The position numbers and the translations under genes were made by a program. DNA of 64,000 bases, from positions 177,919 through 241,918 of the IMG/VR virus record IMGVR_UViG_3300025770_000870; one strand, 5' to 3'. Shown one piece after another: positions 22,522 through 29,460 of the stretch (position 1 is the first letter of the stretch; each line of letters starts with the position of its first letter). Under the pieces are notes generated by a model. It was not told where the DNA came from and made no database searches. It saw nothing but the letters and a program-made list of their open reading frames with translations.

Positions 22522-24252
22522 ATGTCACACATTAGAATAGACAAACAAAAAGCTATGAAGAAATGGTCTCCAGTATTAGAGAACATGGGAGTTGCTGGTG
22601 AAGATAGATTGGATTGGATGTCAGAATATGCTGAATTTCACTCAATCAATGAAAACGCTTACGCAAACGCTTCAAACGTATCGGGTATGGGAGCTGTAGT
22701 AGCTGCACAACCTAATTCATTAGCTGGTAACACAATTGGCAATTACGCTGACTCAACTGGTTCAGGTGATGTTGGTCAAAACCTTTTACCGGTAGCGATG
22801 AAAATAGCAGCTCAAACAATCGGTTTAGATTTAGTAGCTGTTAAACCTTCTCCAGGTCCAAAAATTGATTTATTATATATCGACTTTAGATATGATGATG
22901 CTCATTTAGGAGATTCAGACGAAAGACCACAAGTCTTTAAGATTGCACCAAACGCTACATTTTTAACTACTGGTGCTGGTGGTATGACAGCAGTTATCGC
23001 TGGATTAAGAGCTCAATTAGCTACGAATACAATCACTGAAACAGTTGGTGGTTTAACTGGTAGAATGTGGAATGATATCACAGATGGTTCAGATGTAGTT
23101 GTAGAACCAACACCTTCAAAAGAAGGAAAAGTTGAATTTTTAGGATTCTCTAGAATTGATGGTTATCCAATGTTCAGAGCTTACAGACAGATGAATACAT
23201 CTCACACAGATGTTGGTTCAGCTCAAGCAAACTGGGGATTTGACCCGACTAGAAACACATTTAGTCCTACAATGTCAATGGCTTCTCAAATTACTGATTT
23301 AGGAGATGTTACTTTAACTGATGAGCCTACTATTGAATTAGTATCAGCTCTTGAAGATCACATTCCTGGTTTCTCTGCAAACTGGATGTCGGATGCTACT
23401 GGCCCTGCTGGTAACTATCCAATGGATAGAGAAATGGACGATAAAAGATACTCTGGTATCATCGGACCAAAAATTAGTTCTAAAACAGTTGCCGTAGGTA
23501 CTATTGAAGTATCTTCAGCTCTTAGAAGAACTGAAATTGAAGATATCAAAGCTAACACTGGTATGGATATCGTTCAAAAAATGGAGTCAATTCTTGTTAA
23601 TGAATTATCTCAAACAATCTCTAAGCAAATTGTTGCTAAGATATTTGAAATGGGTTCACTTAACAGATTATCTGCACCAGCTTATGTTGGAACAGCACCG
23701 GCACCATTAGCGGGACAAACAATCTTTGACTTAAACACAGCTTATGCAACTGTTGCTGCTGGTAATGGAAACGTTGGTGGTGAAACTACACACGCTGTTC
23801 AAAGAAAGCTTGTAACTAAGATAGCTCACGCTTCTAACTACATCGCTACAGAGGGACGTGTTGGTCCAGCTCAATACCTTATTACAAATGGGGGATTAGC
23901 AGCAGCACTTTCTGATATCTCTGGTTATACAATTAACCCAGTGAAATCAAAAATCAATGGTCAAGGTCAATTATACCCAGTAGGTTCAATTGGAGATATT
24001 TCAATATATGTTGATCCATATATGAGATATAACGACAATAGAATTGCTCTTGGTAGAAAGAACAATCCAGATCAACCAGGTATTATTTTTGTACCTTACT
24101 TAATGGCTCAGTCTATATCTGTAATTTCTGAAGCGACTTTCGCTCCTAGAATGTTACTAAGATCTAGATACGCTGTAACAGAAGTTGGTTGGTTCCCACA
24201 AAAACAATTTATGACTATCGAAGTTACAGATGTGAATACACTTCTTAACTAA
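22522..24252 (+). CDS. major capsid protein (T4 gp23-like)
   Basis: KKWSPVLE start, QTIGLDLVAVKP, IFVPY, TFAPRMLLRSRYAV; lies downstream of protease/scaffold. Confidence 0.92.
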   Translation: MSHIRIDKQKAMKKWSPVLENMGVAGEDRLDWMSEYAEFHSINENAYANASNVSGMGAVVAAQPNSLAGNTIGNYADSTGSGDVGQNLLPVAMKIAAQTIGLDLVAVKPSPGPKIDLLYIDFRYDDAHLGDSDERPQVFKIAPNATFLTTGAGGMTAVIAGLRAQLATNTITETVGGLTGRMWNDITDGSDVVVEPTPSKEGKVEFLGFSRIDGYPMFRAYRQMNTSHTDVGSAQANWGFDPTRNTFSPTMSMASQITDLGDVTLTDEPTIELVSALEDHIPGFSANWMSDATGPAGNYPMDREMDDKRYSGIIGPKISSKTVAVGTIEVSSALRRTEIEDIKANTGMDIVQKMESILVNELSQTISKQIVAKIFEMGSLNRLSAPAYVGTAPAPLAGQTIFDLNTAYATVAAGNGNVGGETTHAVQRKLVTKIAHASNYIATEGRVGPAQYLITNGGLAAALSDISGYTINPVKSKINGQGQLYPVGSIGDISIYVDPYMRYNDNRIALGRKNNPDQPGIIFVPYLMAQSISVISEATFAPRMLLRSRYAVTEVGWFPQKQFMTIEVTDVNTLLN

Positions 24253-24326: not shown

Positions 24327-24716
24327 ATGATTAAAAAGTATAATTATTTCTTTGAGTCTAAGAAGACTAAGTTCCCTAATATTAAGAAAGTTGAAGTAGA
24401 AGGATTCTTTATTCATATAGGTAGAGACTCCAAATCTAACGACCACTTAACATTTAACGTTGCTGATGATAAAGACATCTGGATGCACGCTAAGGGTGTT
24501 CCTGGGAGTCATGTTATTATAAGAGTTAGAGAAAACTTACCAACTCAAGAAATACTAAGATATGTTGCTGAATTAGCTAAAAAGAATAGTAAAGCTAGTA
24601 AAGAAGATAATGTAACTGTTGTTTATTGCCAAAGAAAATTTGTTAAGAAAGAAAGTGGTATGAATGAGGGTCAAGTAAGAGTTGATTATATCAATGCCTA
24701 CGAAATCGTAGTTTGA
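24327..24716 (+). CDS. standalone NFACT-R (DUF814, RqcH/FbpA C-terminal RNA-binding) domain protein
   Basis: IGRDSKSNDHLT, DIWMHAKGVPGSHVII, VVYCQRKFVKK; CTS-like start MIKKYNYFFES. Confidence 0.9.
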   Translation: MIKKYNYFFESKKTKFPNIKKVEVEGFFIHIGRDSKSNDHLTFNVADDKDIWMHAKGVPGSHVIIRVRENLPTQEILRYVAELAKKNSKASKEDNVTVVYCQRKFVKKESGMNEGQVRVDYINAYEIVV

Positions 24717-24753: not shown

Positions 24754-26109
24754 ATGGCAGGAGAAACTAAAAGAGTAAAATTTTCGGATAAATTACTAAA
24801 GATACTTAAAAGTATGGAGGATAATAATAGTTATCTAGCTTTTGAACTTCTTTGGATGAATGATCCAACTGCAAAATATCATAATGGCCTTAATATAACA
24901 AATGTTGATTGTGGTACAGATAAATCATCAGATTTTAATTTCACTGTTGTTATTGGTGGTAAGAAAAATATAATGAAAATTGGTAAATTCATTAGATATT
25001 ACTTTTCTAATCTATTTAGTAGTGATGAGATAACAAAATTTGCTCATGCTTTCAATAGAGTGAAGAATGGTGGTAAGGCTGAACAATCTGGTAAAAAAGT
25101 TGAAATACCTGAGTTTAGTTATAATCCAAAAGACCCTAGGTCTACATTCTTATCACTTGTTACAGAAACATACCCACACCCACATGAGGAGAAAGTTATG
25201 AAATACTTACCAAAAGACTTAGATAAAGATGAATTTGGTAATTATTATAAAGTGATTCCTGGTGATGATACTACAATGTTTAGTTCTCACCTTGATACGG
25301 CTGATAGAAGTCCAGTTCCTACTAACCTATTCACTAAAGAGGTAGATGGGGATGAGATAATCTATACTGATGGTAGTACAATATTAGGGGCTGATGATAA
25401 GTCTGGAGTTACTGTTATGATGTATATGATGGTTCATAATATCCCAGGTATTTATTATTTCTTTATTGGTGAAGAAAGAGGTGGTATTGGTTCTAATCAA
25501 TTAGCTGATGTTTATGATAAATTTGATTTCCTAAAAAATGTTAAGAAATGTATTTCTTTTGATAGAAGAAGAACAATTTCTGTTATAACACATCAAATGG
25601 GTGGTCGTTGTTGTTCTGATGCTTTTGGTACAGGACTTTGTAAAGAGTACAATAAACAAGGACTTAACCTTTCATTGGATAATGGTGGCGTTTATACTGA
25701 TTCTGCTTCATTTATGGATATTATTCCTGAGTGTACTAATTTATCTGTTGGTTATTTAAATGAACACACAGGTAGAGAAGAACAAAACATGACATTTTTA
25801 ATACAGTTGTGTAAAACTTCTATTAATGTTGATTGGGCTGGATTACCAGTTGCTAGAAAAGTAGGTTTGAACCTTGATTTAGTGCAGAAGCACAAATCTT
25901 TAATTGATGTTATAAAAAATGCAGTATTTGAATTAGAGGTGAAGATGGTTGGGTTTGAGGATAAAATATATATAAGAATAGATTTAGATGATACTAATCT
26001 AGTAACTGTTTATGATACTTTGAATATTGTACAAAACTTACTTGATAAACATAAAGTAGATAGTATGTGTATTTTTACTGAAACATATCTTAAAATAGAA
26101 TTAACATAA
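24754..26109 (+). CDS. M28-family metallopeptidase with N-terminal extension
   Basis: SHLDT, GADDKSG, GEERG, SFDRR, TDSA, NEHT zinc-ligand motifs. Confidence 0.8.
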   Translation: MAGETKRVKFSDKLLKILKSMEDNNSYLAFELLWMNDPTAKYHNGLNITNVDCGTDKSSDFNFTVVIGGKKNIMKIGKFIRYYFSNLFSSDEITKFAHAFNRVKNGGKAEQSGKKVEIPEFSYNPKDPRSTFLSLVTETYPHPHEEKVMKYLPKDLDKDEFGNYYKVIPGDDTTMFSSHLDTADRSPVPTNLFTKEVDGDEIIYTDGSTILGADDKSGVTVMMYMMVHNIPGIYYFFIGEERGGIGSNQLADVYDKFDFLKNVKKCISFDRRRTISVITHQMGGRCCSDAFGTGLCKEYNKQGLNLSLDNGGVYTDSASFMDIIPECTNLSVGYLNEHTGREEQNMTFLIQLCKTSINVDWAGLPVARKVGLNLDLVQKHKSLIDVIKNAVFELEVKMVGFEDKIYIRIDLDDTNLVTVYDTLNIVQNLLDKHKVDSMCIFTETYLKIELT

Positions 26110-26110
26110 T

Positions 26111-26605
26111 ATGAAGAATATTAAGAATTATAAGAAGTTCCTAGAAAAGGAAAATATAAGAGAGGATGAGAACTCATATCTTAATGATGATATTAACGAT
26201 CCTTGGGGTGATCCAAGTGATAGATGGTCTGATCGGTCGGATTATGATGATGAGGGTTACCAGTATCTTAATGGTGGTGAGTCTAGATCTAGTGAGGATG
26301 ATAATGATGATAGAGATGATGTTCAACATTTACTTTACTTGTTAAGAACAATGTTTAAGAACAATGGTATTGAGGTTGAAATAGAACATAAGAACTTAGA
26401 TATTATGATATATTGTGTTATGAATAGAAAGGAAAGATTAAAAGATGTTATTAATGTTTTAGATGTGGCTAATAAATTGAAGAAGGATGTATTACCACAA
26501 TATGATTGTGAGTTTGAGATGTGGGAAACTAGAAAAGGTAAACCAATGTTAACCTTTAACTTCTTTTATGATGAAGGTTTGAACGATGATCGTGTTCCAT
26601 TTTAA
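26111..26605 (+). CDS. acidic hypothetical protein with CTS-like N-terminus
   Basis: starts MKNIKNYKKFLE; ends LNDDRVPF. Confidence 0.7.
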   Translation: MKNIKNYKKFLEKENIREDENSYLNDDINDPWGDPSDRWSDRSDYDDEGYQYLNGGESRSSEDDNDDRDDVQHLLYLLRTMFKNNGIEVEIEHKNLDIMIYCVMNRKERLKDVINVLDVANKLKKDVLPQYDCEFEMWETRKGKPMLTFNFFYDEGLNDDRVPF

Positions 26606-26675
26606 CTATAAACAATCCATTTTAACAACTTTTAAATATTTTAGTATATTATATATACATTAATTACAAACACTT

Positions 26676-27052
26676 GGGGGTGTCATAGAATAGATTCGCA
26701 GAGTAAAGGTAGTTATGCAGGTATCGGATTGTTAAATACCCGATTAATAAATTAAATAACAAAACAGTAAACGGAAACGTAACAGAAGTAGCAAGCAAAG
26801 AAGATTTAGTATTTGCTCTACAAAACAACCTACTTAACGTAGGGGAGTTAGTTGAAGCTTAATAGAGGAAACTCTTGAAAATTTAACAACTGATTTACAC
26901 AGTTAAAAAGGTAAGACCGTTATTTGATAATTTTTAGAAGTCTTTTCAAAAAAATTATCTAGTTTGAAAGTTTAGAAAAACTTTCTAAGCCTGTAAATGA
27001 ATAATTATTGTTAACTGAGGAAGACACGATGGGCAGTACATCGTCATCTCCA
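26676..27052 (+). ncRNA. ssrA: tmRNA (one-piece)
   Basis: 5' GGGGGTG pairs with 3' CATCTCC (27045-27051) including the G3.U70 alanine determinant and discriminator A; T-arm ACGATG/CATCGT; helix 2 TGCAGG/CCTGTA and TAGTTAT/ATAATTA; internal tag ORF 26773-26862; late promoter upstream and terminator downstream. Confidence 0.88.
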
Positions 27053-27087
27053 CAAGAGCCGATTGAATACTTTCAATTGGATTTTTT

Positions 27088-27120
27088 AACCTCACTTCCT
27101 ACATGGGAGTGAGGTTTTTT
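27088..27120 (+). terminator. intrinsic terminator after tmRNA
   Basis: AACCTCACTTCC-tacat-GGGAGTGAGGTT plus T-run. Confidence 0.85.
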
Positions 27121-27184
27121 AATGCTATAGAACTATGACGTATTGTTTTTGATAAACTAATCTATTATTTTAAATATAATAGTT

Positions 27185-27661
27185 ATGATTAATAAATTCG
27201 AAGGTCGCTGGAGATTTCTATCAAACTTCTATCCGTGTGTGGTAGAACACCAAGGTATATCATATCCATCAAATGAACATTATTATGTTGCTATGAAAGT
27301 GACGGATGAACAATTTATTAATGGTAGATATTATACCGCTGGTGATTTCAGAGAAATGATAGCGACAATACCAAGTGCTGCTATTGCTAAAAAGTTAGGA
27401 CAGAAAATAAAGGTTCGTAAAGATTGGGAAGTTAAGAAGATTGAATTTATGAACTGGGGTGTTAGAGAAAAATTTAATAACAACTCAACTCTTCGAGAAT
27501 TATTATTATCAACTGGTGACGATGAACTAATCGAGGGTAATTTTCATAAAGATACTTTTTGGGGAGTTTGTAATGGAAAGGGTAAAAACCATCTTGGTAA
27601 AATTCTTATGGAAGTAAGAAGAGAGTTGAGAGGTGAGAAGAGAGTTGGTCTGTTTATTTGA
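27185..27661 (+). CDS. NADAR (YbiA/DUF1768) family protein
   Basis: FLSNFYP, YPSNEHYY, REKF...LRELLLSTGDDELIEGN...DTFWGV...GKNHLGKILMEVR. Confidence 0.92.
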   Translation: MINKFEGRWRFLSNFYPCVVEHQGISYPSNEHYYVAMKVTDEQFINGRYYTAGDFREMIATIPSAAIAKKLGQKIKVRKDWEVKKIEFMNWGVREKFNNNSTLRELLLSTGDDELIEGNFHKDTFWGVCNGKGKNHLGKILMEVRRELRGEKRVGLFI

Positions 27662-27755
27662 ATAAAAAAGGGAAACTTTTGATAAGATTGCTTCTATAAC
27701 TAAAAGTAAGAAAAAATATAGAAAATAATTTCTAAAAAATATAAAACCAATAAAA

Positions 27756-28727
27756 ATGTCTGTTATTAGCTATTTTGGTGGCAAGTCCTCAAAGGTCTTC
27801 CATCAGTTCATCAACACAAGAATACCAAAAGATGGTATCAAAACTTATGTAGAACCATTCTCAGGTGCAATGGGAACGTATATGGATGACCCAAATCTTA
27901 AATTCGATACAGTTGTTTATAATGATAAGAACCGCCACCAGGTGAACTTATATAAGTGTTGTCAAAATCCAACAGAAATGTTGATACATATAGATAATCT
28001 AAAGAGTGGTTTATTACACACAACAGAAACGGATCCAATAAAAAATTGGGATTTTTATAAAGCTATTTATAAGACATTTCAAAAGAATGATTTCTTAGAT
28101 GATATGGATTTTGAGATTGGGGATTATGAAAAAGCTGCTATGTATGCTTTCTTAATTACATCAGCTCATAATTCAGTTTATCCAAGAGGAGCAGGGTTTA
28201 ATGGTTATAAGAAGAATAATGGCAAACTTAAAATAGAAGCACTTGTTAATAAACTAAAGAAGGGTAAGTACACAGAGAAATTGGAATCAATTACTGAGTT
28301 CTATAATATTGATTTTGAGGAATTGATAAACAAATATGATTCAGTAGATACATTTCTTTACTTAGACCCACCTTACGCTAGATTTGACGAGGCTAAAGGA
28401 ATGGATGATGCTAGGAGACTATTCTGGTATGGATGTGATGATGAAGGTGTCTTTGGACCCGAATCACATAGAAGGTTATTAGAAATGCTTAAAAAGACTG
28501 ATTGTAGATGGTCATTATCTTATTATTACTTTCCTTTATTAGAAGAATTATTACCAAGAGACCAATATAACTGGGTTGAGAAAGAAGTATTTAGAAGTTC
28601 TGCTCATGGTGGTAACAATTCGGATAATAAAAAGGTACAAGCTAAAGGTGTTGAGATGCTTATTATGAATTATAATCCAGAAACGGGAGAAAAAATCACT
28701 AATAAGGATGTCGAATGTGAACTTTAA
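27756..28727 (+). CDS. DNA adenine methyltransferase (Dam/D12 class)
   Basis: YFGGKS, YVEPFSGA, YNDKN, LYLDPPY. Confidence 0.9.
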   Translation: MSVISYFGGKSSKVFHQFINTRIPKDGIKTYVEPFSGAMGTYMDDPNLKFDTVVYNDKNRHQVNLYKCCQNPTEMLIHIDNLKSGLLHTTETDPIKNWDFYKAIYKTFQKNDFLDDMDFEIGDYEKAAMYAFLITSAHNSVYPRGAGFNGYKKNNGKLKIEALVNKLKKGKYTEKLESITEFYNIDFEELINKYDSVDTFLYLDPPYARFDEAKGMDDARRLFWYGCDDEGVFGPESHRRLLEMLKKTDCRWSLSYYYFPLLEELLPRDQYNWVEKEVFRSSAHGGNNSDNKKVQAKGVEMLIMNYNPETGEKITNKDVECEL

Positions 28728-29460
28728 GATTGTTGATATTTTCGAGAGTGTTAAGGATGATATTTTTTCAATTCAACCATATTTATCTATTAATAATAAT
28801 CTAAAAAATTTCACTACTAATACATTTAGTTTATCAATTCCGATGGAATTGGATGGGTTTGGTGTTGATACTGATGCTGAGATGATAAGTCTTATTAGGA
28901 TTGAGATGAATCAAAGTATTTATAAAACAATTTTGAAAGAATTATTCAATACTTCAAAATTTGATTATATAGATATTTCTAAAACTGTTAATACTCACCA
29001 ATCTGTTAATGATATTATTGATTTTTTATCTATTGATTGTATAGATAAAAAATATAAGTATTTAGTTACGAATACTTCTATGGCTAATTCAATAGGTGAT
29101 AGTTCATTATTTAACTTTAAACCAAGTGCATCGGTTGTAGAATCTCAAGGTTTACCATATTTATTTGGGTCTTTGATTAAATATGATGTTTATATAGATC
29201 CTTTTATGAAATTTGATGATAATAGAATTTGCTTATTTGATTCTTGTGAGATTAATATAGAGAATATAAATCAAACTGTTACATCAGCGGCCACATTTGC
29301 ACCTAAGATGATGATAAGTTATGATGTGGCTTTTAAAATAGCAGACTCTAAGGTTATATTTGTTTTAGATGGTAATGAATCAAGTAGTTCTTATAAGCAA
29401 TATAAACAATTACAGCGTGATATAAAAATAAATTCTTTATTAGATGGCTCAACAGATTAA
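28708..29460 (+). CDS. truncated major-capsid paralog with C-terminal RDIKINSLL motif
   Basis: YDVYIDPFMKFDDNRICL and AATFAPKMMI align with ISIYVDPYMRYNDNRIAL and EATFAPRMLL of the 22522 capsid. Confidence 0.75.
   Translation: MSNVNFKIVDIFESVKDDIFSIQPYLSINNNLKNFTTNTFSLSIPMELDGFGVDTDAEMISLIRIEMNQSIYKTILKELFNTSKFDYIDISKTVNTHQSVNDIIDFLSIDCIDKKYKYLVTNTSMANSIGDSSLFNFKPSASVVESQGLPYLFGSLIKYDVYIDPFMKFDDNRICLFDSCEINIENINQTVTSAATFAPKMMISYDVAFKIADSKVIFVLDGNESSSSYKQYKQLQRDIKINSLLDGSTD

What the first reader, a model, noticed from the sequence alone, without database searches (positions are those of the whole stretch)
26676..27052. Phage tmRNA with an unusually long tag and a non-canonical T-loop
The acceptor stem with G3.U70, discriminator A and helix 2 is visible. 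CCA is not encoded (ACAA follows). The T-loop reads GGCAGUA instead of UUCRANY, a variant I recall from the permuted alphaproteobacterial tmRNAs, yet this gene is one-piece. The likely resume codon at 26773 has the UA at -5/-4 expected for resumption (UAAAC-GGA). It gives a 29-codon tag, GNVTEVASKEDLVFALQNNLLNVGELVEA followed by TAA TAG, roughly two to three times typical length and ending LVEA rather than ALAA. Inference: it may rescue ribosomes while sending products to a different protease, or to none.
Basis: partly seen in the sequence, partly recalled or inferred. Interest (0 to 1): 0.75.

Follow-up and report, generated by a model that had tools for sequence, protein, structure and literature searches.

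The report
Hidden tmRNA of marine megaphages
This is a real, expressed ribosome-rescue RNA (tmRNA) from a roughly 480-kb marine phage that also encodes its own SmpB partner; it is so divergent (odd T-loop, 29-codon tag, no encoded CCA) that the standard tmRNA finders miss it and its relatives.

Summary
Window 26676-27052(+) is a one-piece tmRNA gene. ARAGORN finds nothing and Rfam RF00023 gives only 8.8 bits, but comparison with homologs settles it. Fifteen distinct homologs from large phage contigs support a 74-bp model that is paired in 95.5% of cells, with 28 pairs changed on both sides. The model has an acceptor stem with invariant G3.U70 and discriminator A, a long P2, PK1 ending 12 nt before the resume codon, PK2, PK3, a hairpin and a 6-bp T-arm with a GGCAGUA loop. 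A start-less frame of 27-29 codons follows an invariant UAAAC/U, always ends in UAA, and has only 3n indels. All five near-complete genomes with this RNA, including a 483-kb assembly of the window's own phage, encode SmpB, a CCA-adding-type enzyme and a Clp ATPase; four encode ClpP. In three ocean metatranscriptomes the only contig on 4 kb covers just this RNA. The tag's fate is untested. Phage tmRNA and SmpB are already known, so this is a new variant of a known kind. It belongs to a megaphage tmRNA lineage with long tags that ARAGORN misses.

The parts
26622..26650 (+). Sigma-70-like promoter candidate (TTAACA-17 nt-TATATT, 10/12), ending 25 nt upstream of the mature 5' end. It would give a short leader to be removed by RNase P.
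   Evidence: This is a consensus match only; promoter-like sites were not enriched over shuffles (5 found, 3.8 expected). One RNA-library contig starts further upstream at 26609.
26676..27052 (+). The whole tmRNA gene (377 nt up to discriminator A; CCA not encoded).
   Evidence: RNA-library contigs cover 26684-27061, 26696-27053 and 26609-26997 with no mismatches.
26676..26682 (+). Acceptor stem (P1), 5' strand GGGGGUG; G3 forms the alanine-identity G.U pair.
   Evidence: All 7 pairs are paired in 15/15 homologs. G3.U is invariant; pair 5 is A-U 10, G-C 3, G.U 2.
26695..26722 (+). P2 helix, 5' strand (segments P2a-f), following a stem-less D-loop region (26683-26694).
   Evidence: 21 pairs, 97-100% paired. 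Covarying pairs include cols 22/358 (CG5 UA5 AU4 GU1) and 30/350 (AU7 GC7 GU1).
26723..26760 (+). Pseudoknot PK1: stem 1 AUCGG/CCGAU (26723-26727 / 26740-26744); stem 2 GUUA in its loop (26731-26734) pairs with UAAC (26757-26760).
   Evidence: Stem 1 is invariant. Stem 2 is 95% paired with 3 of 4 pairs changed on both sides. It ends 12 nt before the resume codon, as in E. coli (PMC2481249).
26768..26772 (+). Frame-setting sequence UAAAC, with U at -5 and A at -4.
   Evidence: GUAAA is invariant in 15/15 and position -1 is C or U. In E. coli U85 and A86 set the frame. The 1-nt indels lie just upstream of it.
26773..26865 (+). Tag reading frame: 29 codons from GGA, with no start codon, then UAA UAG.
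   Evidence: The frame is open in 15/15 (27-29 codons), always ends in UAA, has indels of 3 or 6 nt only, and is most variable at the third codon position. pN/pS is 0.68 against 0.86 and 0.77 in the other frames.
26789..26820 (+). Conserved hairpin inside the tag frame (26789-26799 / 26812-26820).
   Evidence: All four inner pairs change on both sides. The codon swaps K/R and F/A/S track the pairing.
26888..26914 (+). Pseudoknot PK2: AACUG/CAGUU, with loop UUAC pairing to downstream GUAA.
   Evidence: Stem 2 is 100% paired with 2 double-sided changes; stem 1 is 81.5% paired in a poorly aligned stretch.
26915..26959 (+). Pseudoknot PK3: GAC/GUC crossed by GAUAAU(U)/(A)AUUAUC.
   Evidence: 84-86% paired, with 4 pairs changed on both sides. 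One subclade has an 11-nt deletion here and a different pairing seen only by eye.
26966..26985 (+). Hairpin at the position of PK4 (GAAAGU...ACUUUC).
   Evidence: 97.8% paired, with 4 of 6 pairs changed on both sides. No sterically plausible second stem was found.
26989..27022 (+). P2 helix, 3' strand, including the widely conserved CUAAGCCUGUA motif.
   Evidence: The same motif (CUAAGCAUGUA) is in the Marinimicrobia and Dyadobacter tmRNAs.
27026..27044 (+). T-arm: 6-bp stem ACGAUG/CAUCGU and 7-nt loop GGCAGUA.
   Evidence: 92% paired, with 4 of 6 pairs changed on both sides. The loop consensus is RGCRGWR. It matches the alpha_tmRNA consensus GGCgGUA.
27045..27052 (+). Acceptor stem 3' strand CAUCUCC plus discriminator A. 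CAA follows, so CCA must be added after transcription.
   Evidence: All 15 homologs end ACAA or ACUA. All five related genomes encode a roughly 400-aa PolyA_pol/CCA-adding-type enzyme.
27059..27125 (+). Two tandem intrinsic terminators (27059-27080 and 27088-27116, each followed by a T-run).
   Evidence: 3 terminator-like sites in the region against 0.2 expected. Terminator hairpins occupy the same position in LR745206 and LR756502.

Best explanation
It is a functional phage-encoded one-piece tmRNA (ssrA) that works with the phage's own SmpB. Shown: a discrete stable RNA of about 380 nt is present in ocean RNA libraries. Its ends form a tRNA-Ala-like domain, with a 7-bp acceptor stem, G3.U70, discriminator A and a T-arm. 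This domain is joined by a long P2 helix to a ring of pseudoknots (PK1-PK3 plus one hairpin) and a conserved, start-less reading frame of 27-29 codons. Inferred: the primary transcript runs from a promoter near 26622-26650 to the tandem terminators at 27059-27125. It is trimmed by RNase P and 3' nucleases, receives CCA from the phage or host CCA-adding enzyme, and is charged with alanine by the host AlaRS. It is then bound by phage SmpB and delivered to ribosomes stalled on broken or stop-less mRNAs during infection. Translation resumes at GGA (26773), positioned by U-5/A-4 twelve nt after PK1, adds A+GNVTEVASKEDLVFALQNNLLNVGELVEA, and terminates at UAA, which frees the ribosome. The fate of the tagged product is the least certain step. 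The tag always ends in a small hydrophobic residue (A or V) but never in ALAA, and its best-conserved part is the N-terminal two-thirds. Degradation by a Clp protease, possibly the phage's own Clp ATPase with ClpP, is my leading guess and is not shown.
For: Structure: a 74-bp model is paired in 95.5% of 1,088 cells, 28 pairs change on both sides, and shifted registers pair far less; MFE z-score is -2.95. RF00023 aligns end to end at exactly these coordinates, and RF01849 matches the T-arm and acceptor at E=0.009. Homology: the P2 motif CUAAGC-UGUA is shared with bacterial tmRNAs. The PK1 motifs and the DNVN tag start are shared with the 636-kb phage tmRNA, which does pass Rfam at 65 bits. Coding: no start codon, 0 stops in 15 sequences against 79 and 32 in the other frames, 3n indels only, UAA at a fixed column, third-position entropy highest, pN/pS lowest in this frame. 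The stop lies in a hairpin loop in about 10 of 15 sequences. Frame-setting U-5/A-4 and the 12-nt spacing from PK1 match E. coli. Partners: SmpB at 167-181 bits in 5/5 genomes, above the NCBIfam equivalog cut-off. G001 is the same phage as the window, at 100% identity over 14 kb. A CCA-adding-type enzyme is in 5/5, ClpP in 4/5 and a Clp ATPase in 5/5. No other tmRNA passes the cut-off in these genomes. Expression: in three independent metatranscriptomes the only contig on window 25000-29000 covers just the RNA, at depths of 4-30 and with no mismatches, while the flanking genes are uncovered.
Against: Both curated detectors fail: ARAGORN finds nothing and RF00023 gives 8.8 bits against a gathering score of 47. 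The T-loop lacks the UU that normally becomes m5U and pseudouridine. The D-loop lacks the usual GG. The T-stem has six pairs, so recognition by AlaRS, EF-Tu and the CCA enzyme is assumed rather than shown. Purifying selection on the peptide is weak (pN/pS 0.68), and some amino-acid changes follow RNA pairing rather than peptide chemistry. The RNA evidence comes from assembled contigs without strand or exact ends, and one contig starts 67 nt upstream of the mature 5' end. No aminoacylation, SmpB binding or tagging has been observed.
Confidence: 0.86

Rival explanations
1. It is a tmRNA-derived RNA that no longer tags. It could act as a decoy or competitor that occupies host SmpB, AlaRS or stalled ribosomes, or it could rescue ribosomes while the encoded peptide has no role of its own. 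The short CDS-less tmRNA-like RNA of mycobacteriophage DS6A inhibits host tmRNA in this way.
For: Selection on the peptide is weak and the C-terminus varies. A covarying hairpin inside the frame shows RNA-level constraint. A CDS-less phage form that inhibits endogenous tmRNA is on record (PMC11915505).
Against: The frame, its length, its UAA stop and its 3n-only indels are kept across 67-100% identity. The frame-setting UAAAC and the PK1 spacing are invariant. The phage keeps its own intact SmpB with the C-terminal DKR tail in all five genomes, which a pure decoy would not need.
Confidence: 0.08
2. It is a structured non-coding RNA or small-ORF transcript unrelated to trans-translation. For example, it could be a tRNA-like element or phage sRNA that resembles tmRNA only by chance in AT-rich sequence.
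For: It scores below threshold on every curated model, and ARAGORN is negative.
Against: The full set of tmRNA-specific features is present in the right order and with covariation. It is homologous to a megaphage tmRNA that passes Rfam. It co-occurs with phage SmpB in 5/5 genomes.
Confidence: 0.03
3. It is a tmRNA recently captured from an alphaproteobacterial host such as SAR11, which would explain the alpha-type T-loop.
For: The GGCAGUA loop matches the alpha_tmRNA consensus. Marine phages of SAR11 and OM43 carry alpha-type tmRNAs (PMC9004378).
Against: The gene order is one-piece, not permuted. The alpha model scores only 15.5 bits. The phage SmpBs form their own clade on a long stem, and their closest cellular relatives are Marinimicrobia and Bacteroidota, with no alphaproteobacteria among the best 80. 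The RNA is homologous to tmRNAs of other Mahaphages, whose predicted hosts are Bacteroidetes.
Confidence: 0.03

Closest known systems
tmRNA of the 636-kb Mahaphage LR756504 (Al-Shayeb et al. 2020 genome set)
   Same: One-piece and phage-encoded. Same 5' GGGGGUG/CAUCUCC acceptor stem, same PK1 motifs (AUUGUUA...UAACAAAA), same resume context UAAAU|G. It has a long tag starting DNVN (24 codons), a non-canonical T-loop (GUCGUA), and a cognate phage SmpB.
   Different: It passes Rfam (65 bits), encodes CCA, and its tag ends MAVAA. The window's family scores 8.8 bits, has the loop GGCAGUA, lacks CCA, and has tags of 27-29 codons ending VEA, ATV, ELV and similar.
Canonical bacterial one-piece tmRNA (E. 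coli SsrA; Rfam RF00023)
   Same: Overall architecture: tRNA-Ala-like domain with G3.U70 and A73, long P2, PK1 12 nt before the resume codon, U-5/A-4, a start-less tag frame with its stop near a hairpin, further pseudoknots, and an SmpB partner.
   Different: The T-loop is GGCAGUA rather than UUCRANY, the T-stem has six pairs, the D-loop has no GG, PK4 is reduced to a hairpin, the tag has 29 codons against the usual 10 and does not end in ALAA, and CCA is not encoded.
Alphaproteobacterial two-piece tmRNA and the jakobid mitochondrial tmRNA (Rfam RF01849)
   Same: The T-loop has GG in place of UU, consensus GGCgGUA (PMC1168896).
   Different: Those genes are circularly permuted and give two RNA pieces, whereas this gene is one-piece. 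There is no SmpB or sequence affinity to Alphaproteobacteria.
Two-piece tmRNAs of marine myophages (OM43 phage Melnitz, pelagimyophages)
   Same: Marine phage-encoded tmRNA, proposed to maintain the hijacked translation machinery or to recycle proteins (PMC9004378).
   Different: Those are alpha-type, permuted and detectable with standard tools, and sit in phages of about 140 kb. I did not check whether those phages encode SmpB.
Mycoplasma tmRNA with long tags directed to Lon (background knowledge: Gur and Sauer 2008, not checked here)
   Same: A tag of about 27 residues whose internal residues, rather than a C-terminal LAA, carry the recognition signal. This is a precedent for a tag redirected to another protease.
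   Different: It is a bacterial gene. These phages encode no Lon_C domain, and instead carry ClpP and a Clp ATPase.

Membership tests
tmRNA (ssrA; Rfam clan CL00001) | 5' and 3' ends form a 7-bp acceptor stem with the alanine identity pair G3.U70 and discriminator A73 | tested here: met
   Paired in 15/15 homologs. G3.U and discriminator A are invariant, and pair 5 covaries.
tmRNA (ssrA; Rfam clan CL00001) | T-arm with a 5-bp stem and a T-psi-C-type loop (UUCRANY) | tested here: not met
   The arm exists and covaries (4 of 6 pairs), but the loop is GGCAGUA (family consensus RGCRGWR) and the stem has 6 pairs. GG for UU is a known exception in alpha and mitochondrial tmRNAs.
tmRNA (ssrA; Rfam clan CL00001) | No anticodon arm; a stem-less D-loop leads into a long P2 helix that joins the tRNA-like domain to the rest | tested here: met
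   P2a-f has 21 pairs, 97-100% paired, several of them covarying. The single-sequence MFE recovers it.
tmRNA (ssrA; Rfam clan CL00001) | Pseudoknot PK1 just upstream of the resume codon | tested here: met
   An H-type knot whose stem 2 covaries at 3 of 4 pairs, with a 12-nt gap to the resume codon as in E. coli.
tmRNA (ssrA; Rfam clan CL00001) | Frame-setting upstream sequence with conserved U-5 and A-4 | tested here: met
   UAAAC/U, with U and A invariant in 15/15.
tmRNA (ssrA; Rfam clan CL00001) | Internal reading frame without a start codon, under coding constraint, ending at a stop in or near a hairpin (P5) | tested here: met
   (frame, 3n indels, codon-position bias). The stop lies in a hairpin loop in about 10 of 15 sequences and is less clear in the window itself.
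tmRNA (ssrA; Rfam clan CL00001) | Further pseudoknots (PK2-PK4) between the tag and the 3' strand of P2 | tested here: inconclusive
   PK2 and PK3 are supported by compensatory changes. The fourth element is a covarying hairpin with no plausible second stem. Reduced pseudoknot numbers are known in active tmRNAs.
tmRNA (ssrA; Rfam clan CL00001) | 3'-terminal CCA | not testable with these tools
   CCA is not encoded (ACAA or ACUA in 15/15). The database authors note that the CCA position does not always encode CCA. One Marinimicrobia gene and the Dyadobacter gene also end CCACAA. A phage CCA-adding-type enzyme is present. Addition could not be read from assembled contigs.
tmRNA (ssrA; Rfam clan CL00001) | A cognate SmpB is available | tested here: met
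   SmpB is in 5/5 genomes, including the window's own phage. It scores above the NCBIfam equivalog cut-off, and the C-terminal DKR tail is kept.
tmRNA (ssrA; Rfam clan CL00001) | Recognition by the curated detectors (RF00023 at 47 bits or more; ARAGORN) | tested here: not met
   8.8 bits, and no ARAGORN call.
tmRNA (ssrA; Rfam clan CL00001) | Accumulates as a discrete stable RNA | tested here: met
   Contigs of 358-389 nt cover only this RNA in three metatranscriptomes, and the flanking genes are silent. Strand and exact ends are not resolved.
tmRNA (ssrA; Rfam clan CL00001) | Charged with alanine and adds the tag to stalled nascent chains | not testable with these tools
   This needs biochemistry or proteomics.
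Alphaproteobacterial two-piece tmRNA (RF01849) | Circularly permuted gene, with the acceptor/T-arm piece upstream of the coding piece | tested here: not met
   The 5' acceptor strand comes first and the T-arm and 3' acceptor strand come last, in all 15 homologs.
Alphaproteobacterial two-piece tmRNA (RF01849) | GGCNGUA T-loop | tested here: met
   GGCAGUA against the consensus GGCgGUA.
Alphaproteobacterial two-piece tmRNA (RF01849) | Scores above the family's gathering threshold (50 bits) | tested here: not met
   15.5 bits, over the 3' part only.
CDS-less phage tmRNA-like RNA (mycobacteriophage DS6A type) | A tRNA-like domain only, with no tag reading frame | tested here: not met
   It is a full-length 377-nt RNA with a conserved frame of 27-29 codons.

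The most novel reading that the evidence does not exclude
These megaphages may carry a self-contained, partly orthogonal protein quality-control module. In this reading the tmRNA's remodelled D-loop and T-loop elbow has co-evolved with a phage-specific SmpB, so the pair works independently of the host's tmRNA and SmpB. The long tag, whose best-conserved part is the N-terminal 17 or so residues rather than the C-terminus, would be read by the phage's own Clp ATPase and ClpP, or by a phage adaptor, and not by host ClpXP. That would let the phage rescue ribosomes and recycle truncated proteins on its own terms during infection. The stand-alone NFACT-R gene 2 kb upstream could be a further part of the module.
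Probability: 0.2. Interest if true: 0.8.

Novelty: new variant of a known kind. Interest (0 to 1): 0.55.

Why it matters
Phage-encoded tmRNA and SmpB have been reported, but mostly from what ARAGORN can detect. This family, and at least three other Mahaphage tmRNAs I checked, are invisible to ARAGORN, and the window's family is also invisible to Rfam at its gathering score. Trans-translation genes in the largest known phages are therefore probably under-annotated. The 15-sequence alignment could seed a covariance model to find them. The family is also a natural experiment. It is a one-piece tmRNA that lacks the T-loop UU (the m5U and pseudouridine sites) and the D-loop GG, has a six-pair T-stem, and is paired with its own long-diverged SmpB. 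Its tag is three times the usual length and does not keep the ALAA degron. That makes two questions testable: how much of the tRNA elbow trans-translation really needs, and whether a virus redirects tagged proteins to its own protease. The phage is widespread in seawater and the RNA is readily seen in ocean metatranscriptomes, so the question has ecological weight as well.

Tried and rejected
ARAGORN on the window, the local region and five related loci found no tmRNA. Rfam at gathering thresholds on the window and on G000 found nothing.

Complex prediction with the two halves of the tRNA-like domain plus phage SmpB was accepted but not folded, because the tool has no verdict for RNA-protein complexes. 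I did not build a full-length covariance model, because about 380 positions exceeds what the calibration forecast allows. I also avoided typing a 393-character structure string, so the pair statistics were computed in a script instead.

An alphaproteobacterial origin was considered because of the T-loop. I rejected it on gene order, the weak alpha-model score, and the SmpB affinities.

A Marinimicrobia or Bacteroidota host tmRNA as the direct source was considered, but their tmRNAs are canonical, with 9-codon tags.

A phage Lon as the tag's reader was checked, and no Lon_C domain is present. A phage AlaRS was checked and found only as a partial hit in one genome. A second stem that would turn the fourth hairpin into PK4 (UUAG/CUAA) was rejected because its connecting loops would have zero length.

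The sub-threshold RF00023 hits elsewhere in the related genomes lie in tRNA arrays, so they are not additional tmRNAs.
Full report
**What is in the sequence.** The candidate lies in a 580-nt gap with no long ORF, between ORFs ending at 26605 and starting at 27185.
- GGGGGUG (26676-26682) pairs with CAUCUCC (27045-27051), giving G3.U70.
- A27052 is the discriminator and CAA follows, so no CCA is encoded.
- The T-arm is ACGAUG-GGCAGUA-CAUCGU (27026-27044).
- UAAAC precedes GGA at 26773, and the frame runs for 29 codons to TAA TAG (26860-26865). It has no ATG, GTG or TTG start upstream in frame.

**The standard detectors fail.** ARAGORN reports nothing, and Rfam at gathering thresholds reports nothing. 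In permissive mode RF00023 aligns end to end at 26676-27055 but scores only 8.8 bits against a gathering score of 47. The alphaproteobacterial model RF01849 matches the T-arm and acceptor region at 15.5 bits (E=0.009 locally).

**Relatives.** The window is the last 64 kb of a 241,918-b IMG/VR virus record. A 483,262-b record, G001 (CheckV 98% complete), is 100% identical to it over 14 kb, so it is a fuller assembly of the same phage.
- The RNA region matches two unannotated uncultured phage genomes of 634,780 and 642,428 b at 81% and 76% identity. Genomes of these sizes are reported in Al-Shayeb et al. 2020, which predicted Bacteroidetes hosts for the largest Mahaphages.
- A conserved 16-mer retrieved 37 IMG/VR loci. 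About 30 are true homologs at 67-100% identity.
- Fifteen distinct full-length copies were aligned as A2.

**Structure.** RNAalifold on A2, followed by a covariation scan and a helix-by-helix count, supports a 74-bp model. It is paired in 95.5% of 1,088 cells, and 28 pairs change on both sides. With the 3' partner shifted by 1-2 columns, pairing falls to 0-76% per helix. The elements are:
- **Acceptor stem:** G3.U is invariant, and pair 5 is A-U, G-C or G.U.
- **P2:** a long interrupted helix of 21 pairs.
- **PK1:** an invariant hairpin whose loop pairs with UAAC downstream; 3 of those 4 pairs covary.
- **Tag-internal hairpin:** a covarying hairpin inside the tag frame.
- **PK2 and PK3:** both are H-type with compensatory changes.
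- **Fourth element:** a covarying hairpin where PK4 would sit.
- **T-arm:** six pairs, four of them with compensatory changes.

The single sequence folds better than all 100 shuffles (z = -2.95) and recovers the acceptor stem, P2, P3 and the T-arm on its own. PK1 ends 12 nt before the resume codon, and U-5 and A-4 are invariant. These match the E. coli spacing and the experimentally defined frame-setting bases (PMC2481249).

**The tag.** All 15 copies have an open frame of 27-29 codons from the same column, ending in UAA at the same column.
- Indels inside the frame are 3 or 6 nt, while 1-nt indels occur just upstream.
- The other two frames contain 79 and 32 stops across the set, and the tag frame contains none.
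- Variability is highest at the third codon position (entropy sums 11.8, 14.6 and 21.0).
- pN/pS is lowest in the tag frame: 0.68 against 0.86 and 0.77.
- The consensus is G[NK][VT][TN]EV[GA][TS]xEDLV[AF]AL..., and the C-termini vary: VEA, ETA, ATV, AVA, MAV, MTV, ELV. The last residue is always A or V.
- Selection on the peptide is real but weak. Within the internal hairpin the K/R and F/A/S codon changes follow base pairing, so part of the conservation is at the RNA level.
- In about 10 of 15 homologs the stop codon lies in the loop of a 6-10-bp hairpin, which is the usual P5 arrangement. The window's own fold is less clear there.
- The commonest tag length in the 2025 tmRNA database is 10 residues (PMC11915505), so 29 codons is about three times the norm.

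**Partners.** All five near-complete genomes with this RNA encode the following, except ClpP, which is in four:
- SmpB at 167-181 bits. The window phage's copy is 145 aa, scores above the NCBIfam equivalog cut-off, and keeps the C-terminal DKR tail.
- A nucleotidyltransferase of about 400 aa of the CCA-adding type, which fits the missing CCA.
- A two-ring Clp/Hsp100 ATPase of about 700 aa.
- ClpP, in four of the five, with two copies in the window's phage.

None has a Lon_C domain, and AlaRS appears only as a partial hit in one genome. None has another tmRNA above Rfam's cut-off, and the weaker hits I examined lie in tRNA arrays.

**Origin.** The nearest cellular SmpBs are from marine Candidatus Neomarinimicrobiota MAGs (48-53% identity), followed by Bacteroidota. 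In a quick ML tree the five phage SmpBs form one clade (SH-aLRT 100) on a long stem of 0.93, with the deeper placement unresolved.
- The sampling was limited to the 80 closest cellular hits.
- The Marinimicrobia genomes have canonical tmRNAs (157-175 bits) with the tag ADYGYMAAA and canonical T-loops. Dyadobacter has GESTYAMAA.
- One Marinimicrobia gene and the Dyadobacter gene also end CCACAA, without an encoded CCA.

So the phage pair is an old phage lineage, not a recent capture from a host. Nothing points to Alphaproteobacteria apart from the T-loop.

**Wider lineage.** SmpB is also present in Lak phages and in the 636-kb and 735-kb Mahaphages at 42-44% identity.

| Phage | RF00023 score | Tag | T-loop | CCA |
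|---|---|---|---|---|
| 636-kb (LR756504) | 65 bits | DNVNSFEQSILNELFAPVEMAVAA (24 codons) | GUCGUA | encoded |
| Lak-B5 | 48 bits | DDEIEFRMAA (10 codons) | UUCGAGU (canonical) | not encoded |
| 735-kb (LR756501) | 21 bits (candidate only) | possibly 33 codons; RNA ends unclear | not resolved | not resolved |
| Window's family | 8.8 bits | 27-29 codons | GGCAGUA | not encoded |

The 636-kb RNA shares PK1 motifs and the resume context with the window's RNA. ARAGORN calls none of the three. Al-Shayeb et al. annotated tmRNAs with ARAGORN, and the 2025 database drew on ARAGORN and Rfind hits and on RefSeq viruses. This lineage has therefore probably gone unannotated. The window's family is its most divergent branch found so far.

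**Expression.** DNA identical to the window is in many marine and seawater metagenomes from 2012 to 2025, and six metatranscriptome runs hold about the share of sampled words that the RNA alone would give. I laid four RNA runs from four studies on window 25000-29000.
- In three runs, the only contig is a 100%-identical piece at 26684-27061, 26696-27053 or 26609-26997, at depths of 4-30. The flanking protein genes are uncovered in those runs. That pattern argues for a discrete, abundant, stable RNA and against DNA carry-over.
- The fourth run holds a variant with about 3% differences.
- Contigs give neither strand nor exact ends, and one starts 67 nt upstream of the mature end, so it may be a precursor.
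- A promoter-like site (26622-26650) and two tandem terminators (27059-27125) bracket the gene.

**Mechanism.**
- Shown: the architecture, the coding signature, the cognate SmpB and the expression.
- Inferred from established tmRNA biology (reviewed in PMC3968760): RNase P and 3' trimming, CCA addition, alanylation through G3.U70, SmpB binding, entry into stalled ribosomes, resumption at GGA, and termination at UAA.
- Open: the tag's fate. It lacks the ALAA degron. Its terminal A or V is compatible with Clp-type recognition, its best-conserved part is N-terminal, and the phage brings its own Clp ATPase and ClpP.
- Also open: how the elbow forms. GG replaces the T-loop UU (a change known from alpha and mitochondrial tmRNAs, PMC1168896) and the D-loop GG is lost, so the elbow is remodelled. 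D-loop/T-loop contacts are needed for SmpB function, so co-evolution with the phage SmpB is plausible but untested.

**Verdict.** This is a genuine phage tmRNA and a new, highly divergent variant of a known kind.

Noticed in passing
window 24327-24716 (+): A 129-aa stand-alone ORF with an NFACT-R_1 domain (PF05670, 59 bits; also NFACT-R_2). This is the RNA-binding module of the RqcH/NEMF ribosome quality-control factors. It lies about 2 kb upstream of the tmRNA, so it may be a second ribosome-rescue-related gene in the neighbourhood.
   Followed up: no
window 27185-27661 (+): The 158-aa ORF immediately downstream of the tmRNA terminators is a NADAR-domain protein (PF08719, 98.8 bits).
   Followed up: no
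L154:1501-1857(-) (LR756504), L155:1501-1910(+) (Lak-B5), L158 (LR756501): Other Mahaphage genomes carry tmRNAs that Rfam scores at 65, 48 and 21 bits and that ARAGORN misses entirely. The 636-kb phage has a 24-codon tag. The 735-kb phage has a possible 33-codon tag ending EDLVLA, but its RNA ends could not be defined.
   Followed up: partly
window 25365-25848, inside ORF 24754-26109: Part of the 451-aa ORF with no Pfam hit has three further copies at 67-68% DNA identity elsewhere in the 483-kb genome (G001 near 166 kb, 218 kb and 303 kb), so it belongs to a paralogous gene family.
   Followed up: no
window 28708-29460 (+) versus 22522-24252 (+): By eye, the 250-aa ORF shares C-terminal motifs with the 576-aa capsid-like ORF (YIDPFMKFDDNRI / ATFAPKMM versus YVDPYMRYNDNRI / ATFAPRML). 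It may be a short paralog of the major capsid protein.
   Followed up: no
L044:1501-1631 (G002): A 131-nt tRNA-like gene with a canonical D-arm and T-arm, a GGGGAUG/CAUCCCC acceptor stem (no G3.U70), and about 55 extra nt in the middle. ARAGORN does not call it. It may be an intron-bearing or otherwise unusual tRNA within a phage tRNA array.
   Followed up: partly
L041:1313-1582 and L044:298-564: The phage tRNA arrays contain several unusually long (82-89 nt) genes that ARAGORN calls tRNA-Lys, and one tRNA with an undetermined anticodon.
   Followed up: no
window 26860-27043 and flanks, run X20: One metatranscriptome holds contigs with about 3-4% differences from the window over the tmRNA and two neighbouring genes, so a related strain's sequences are also present in RNA libraries.
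   Followed up: no
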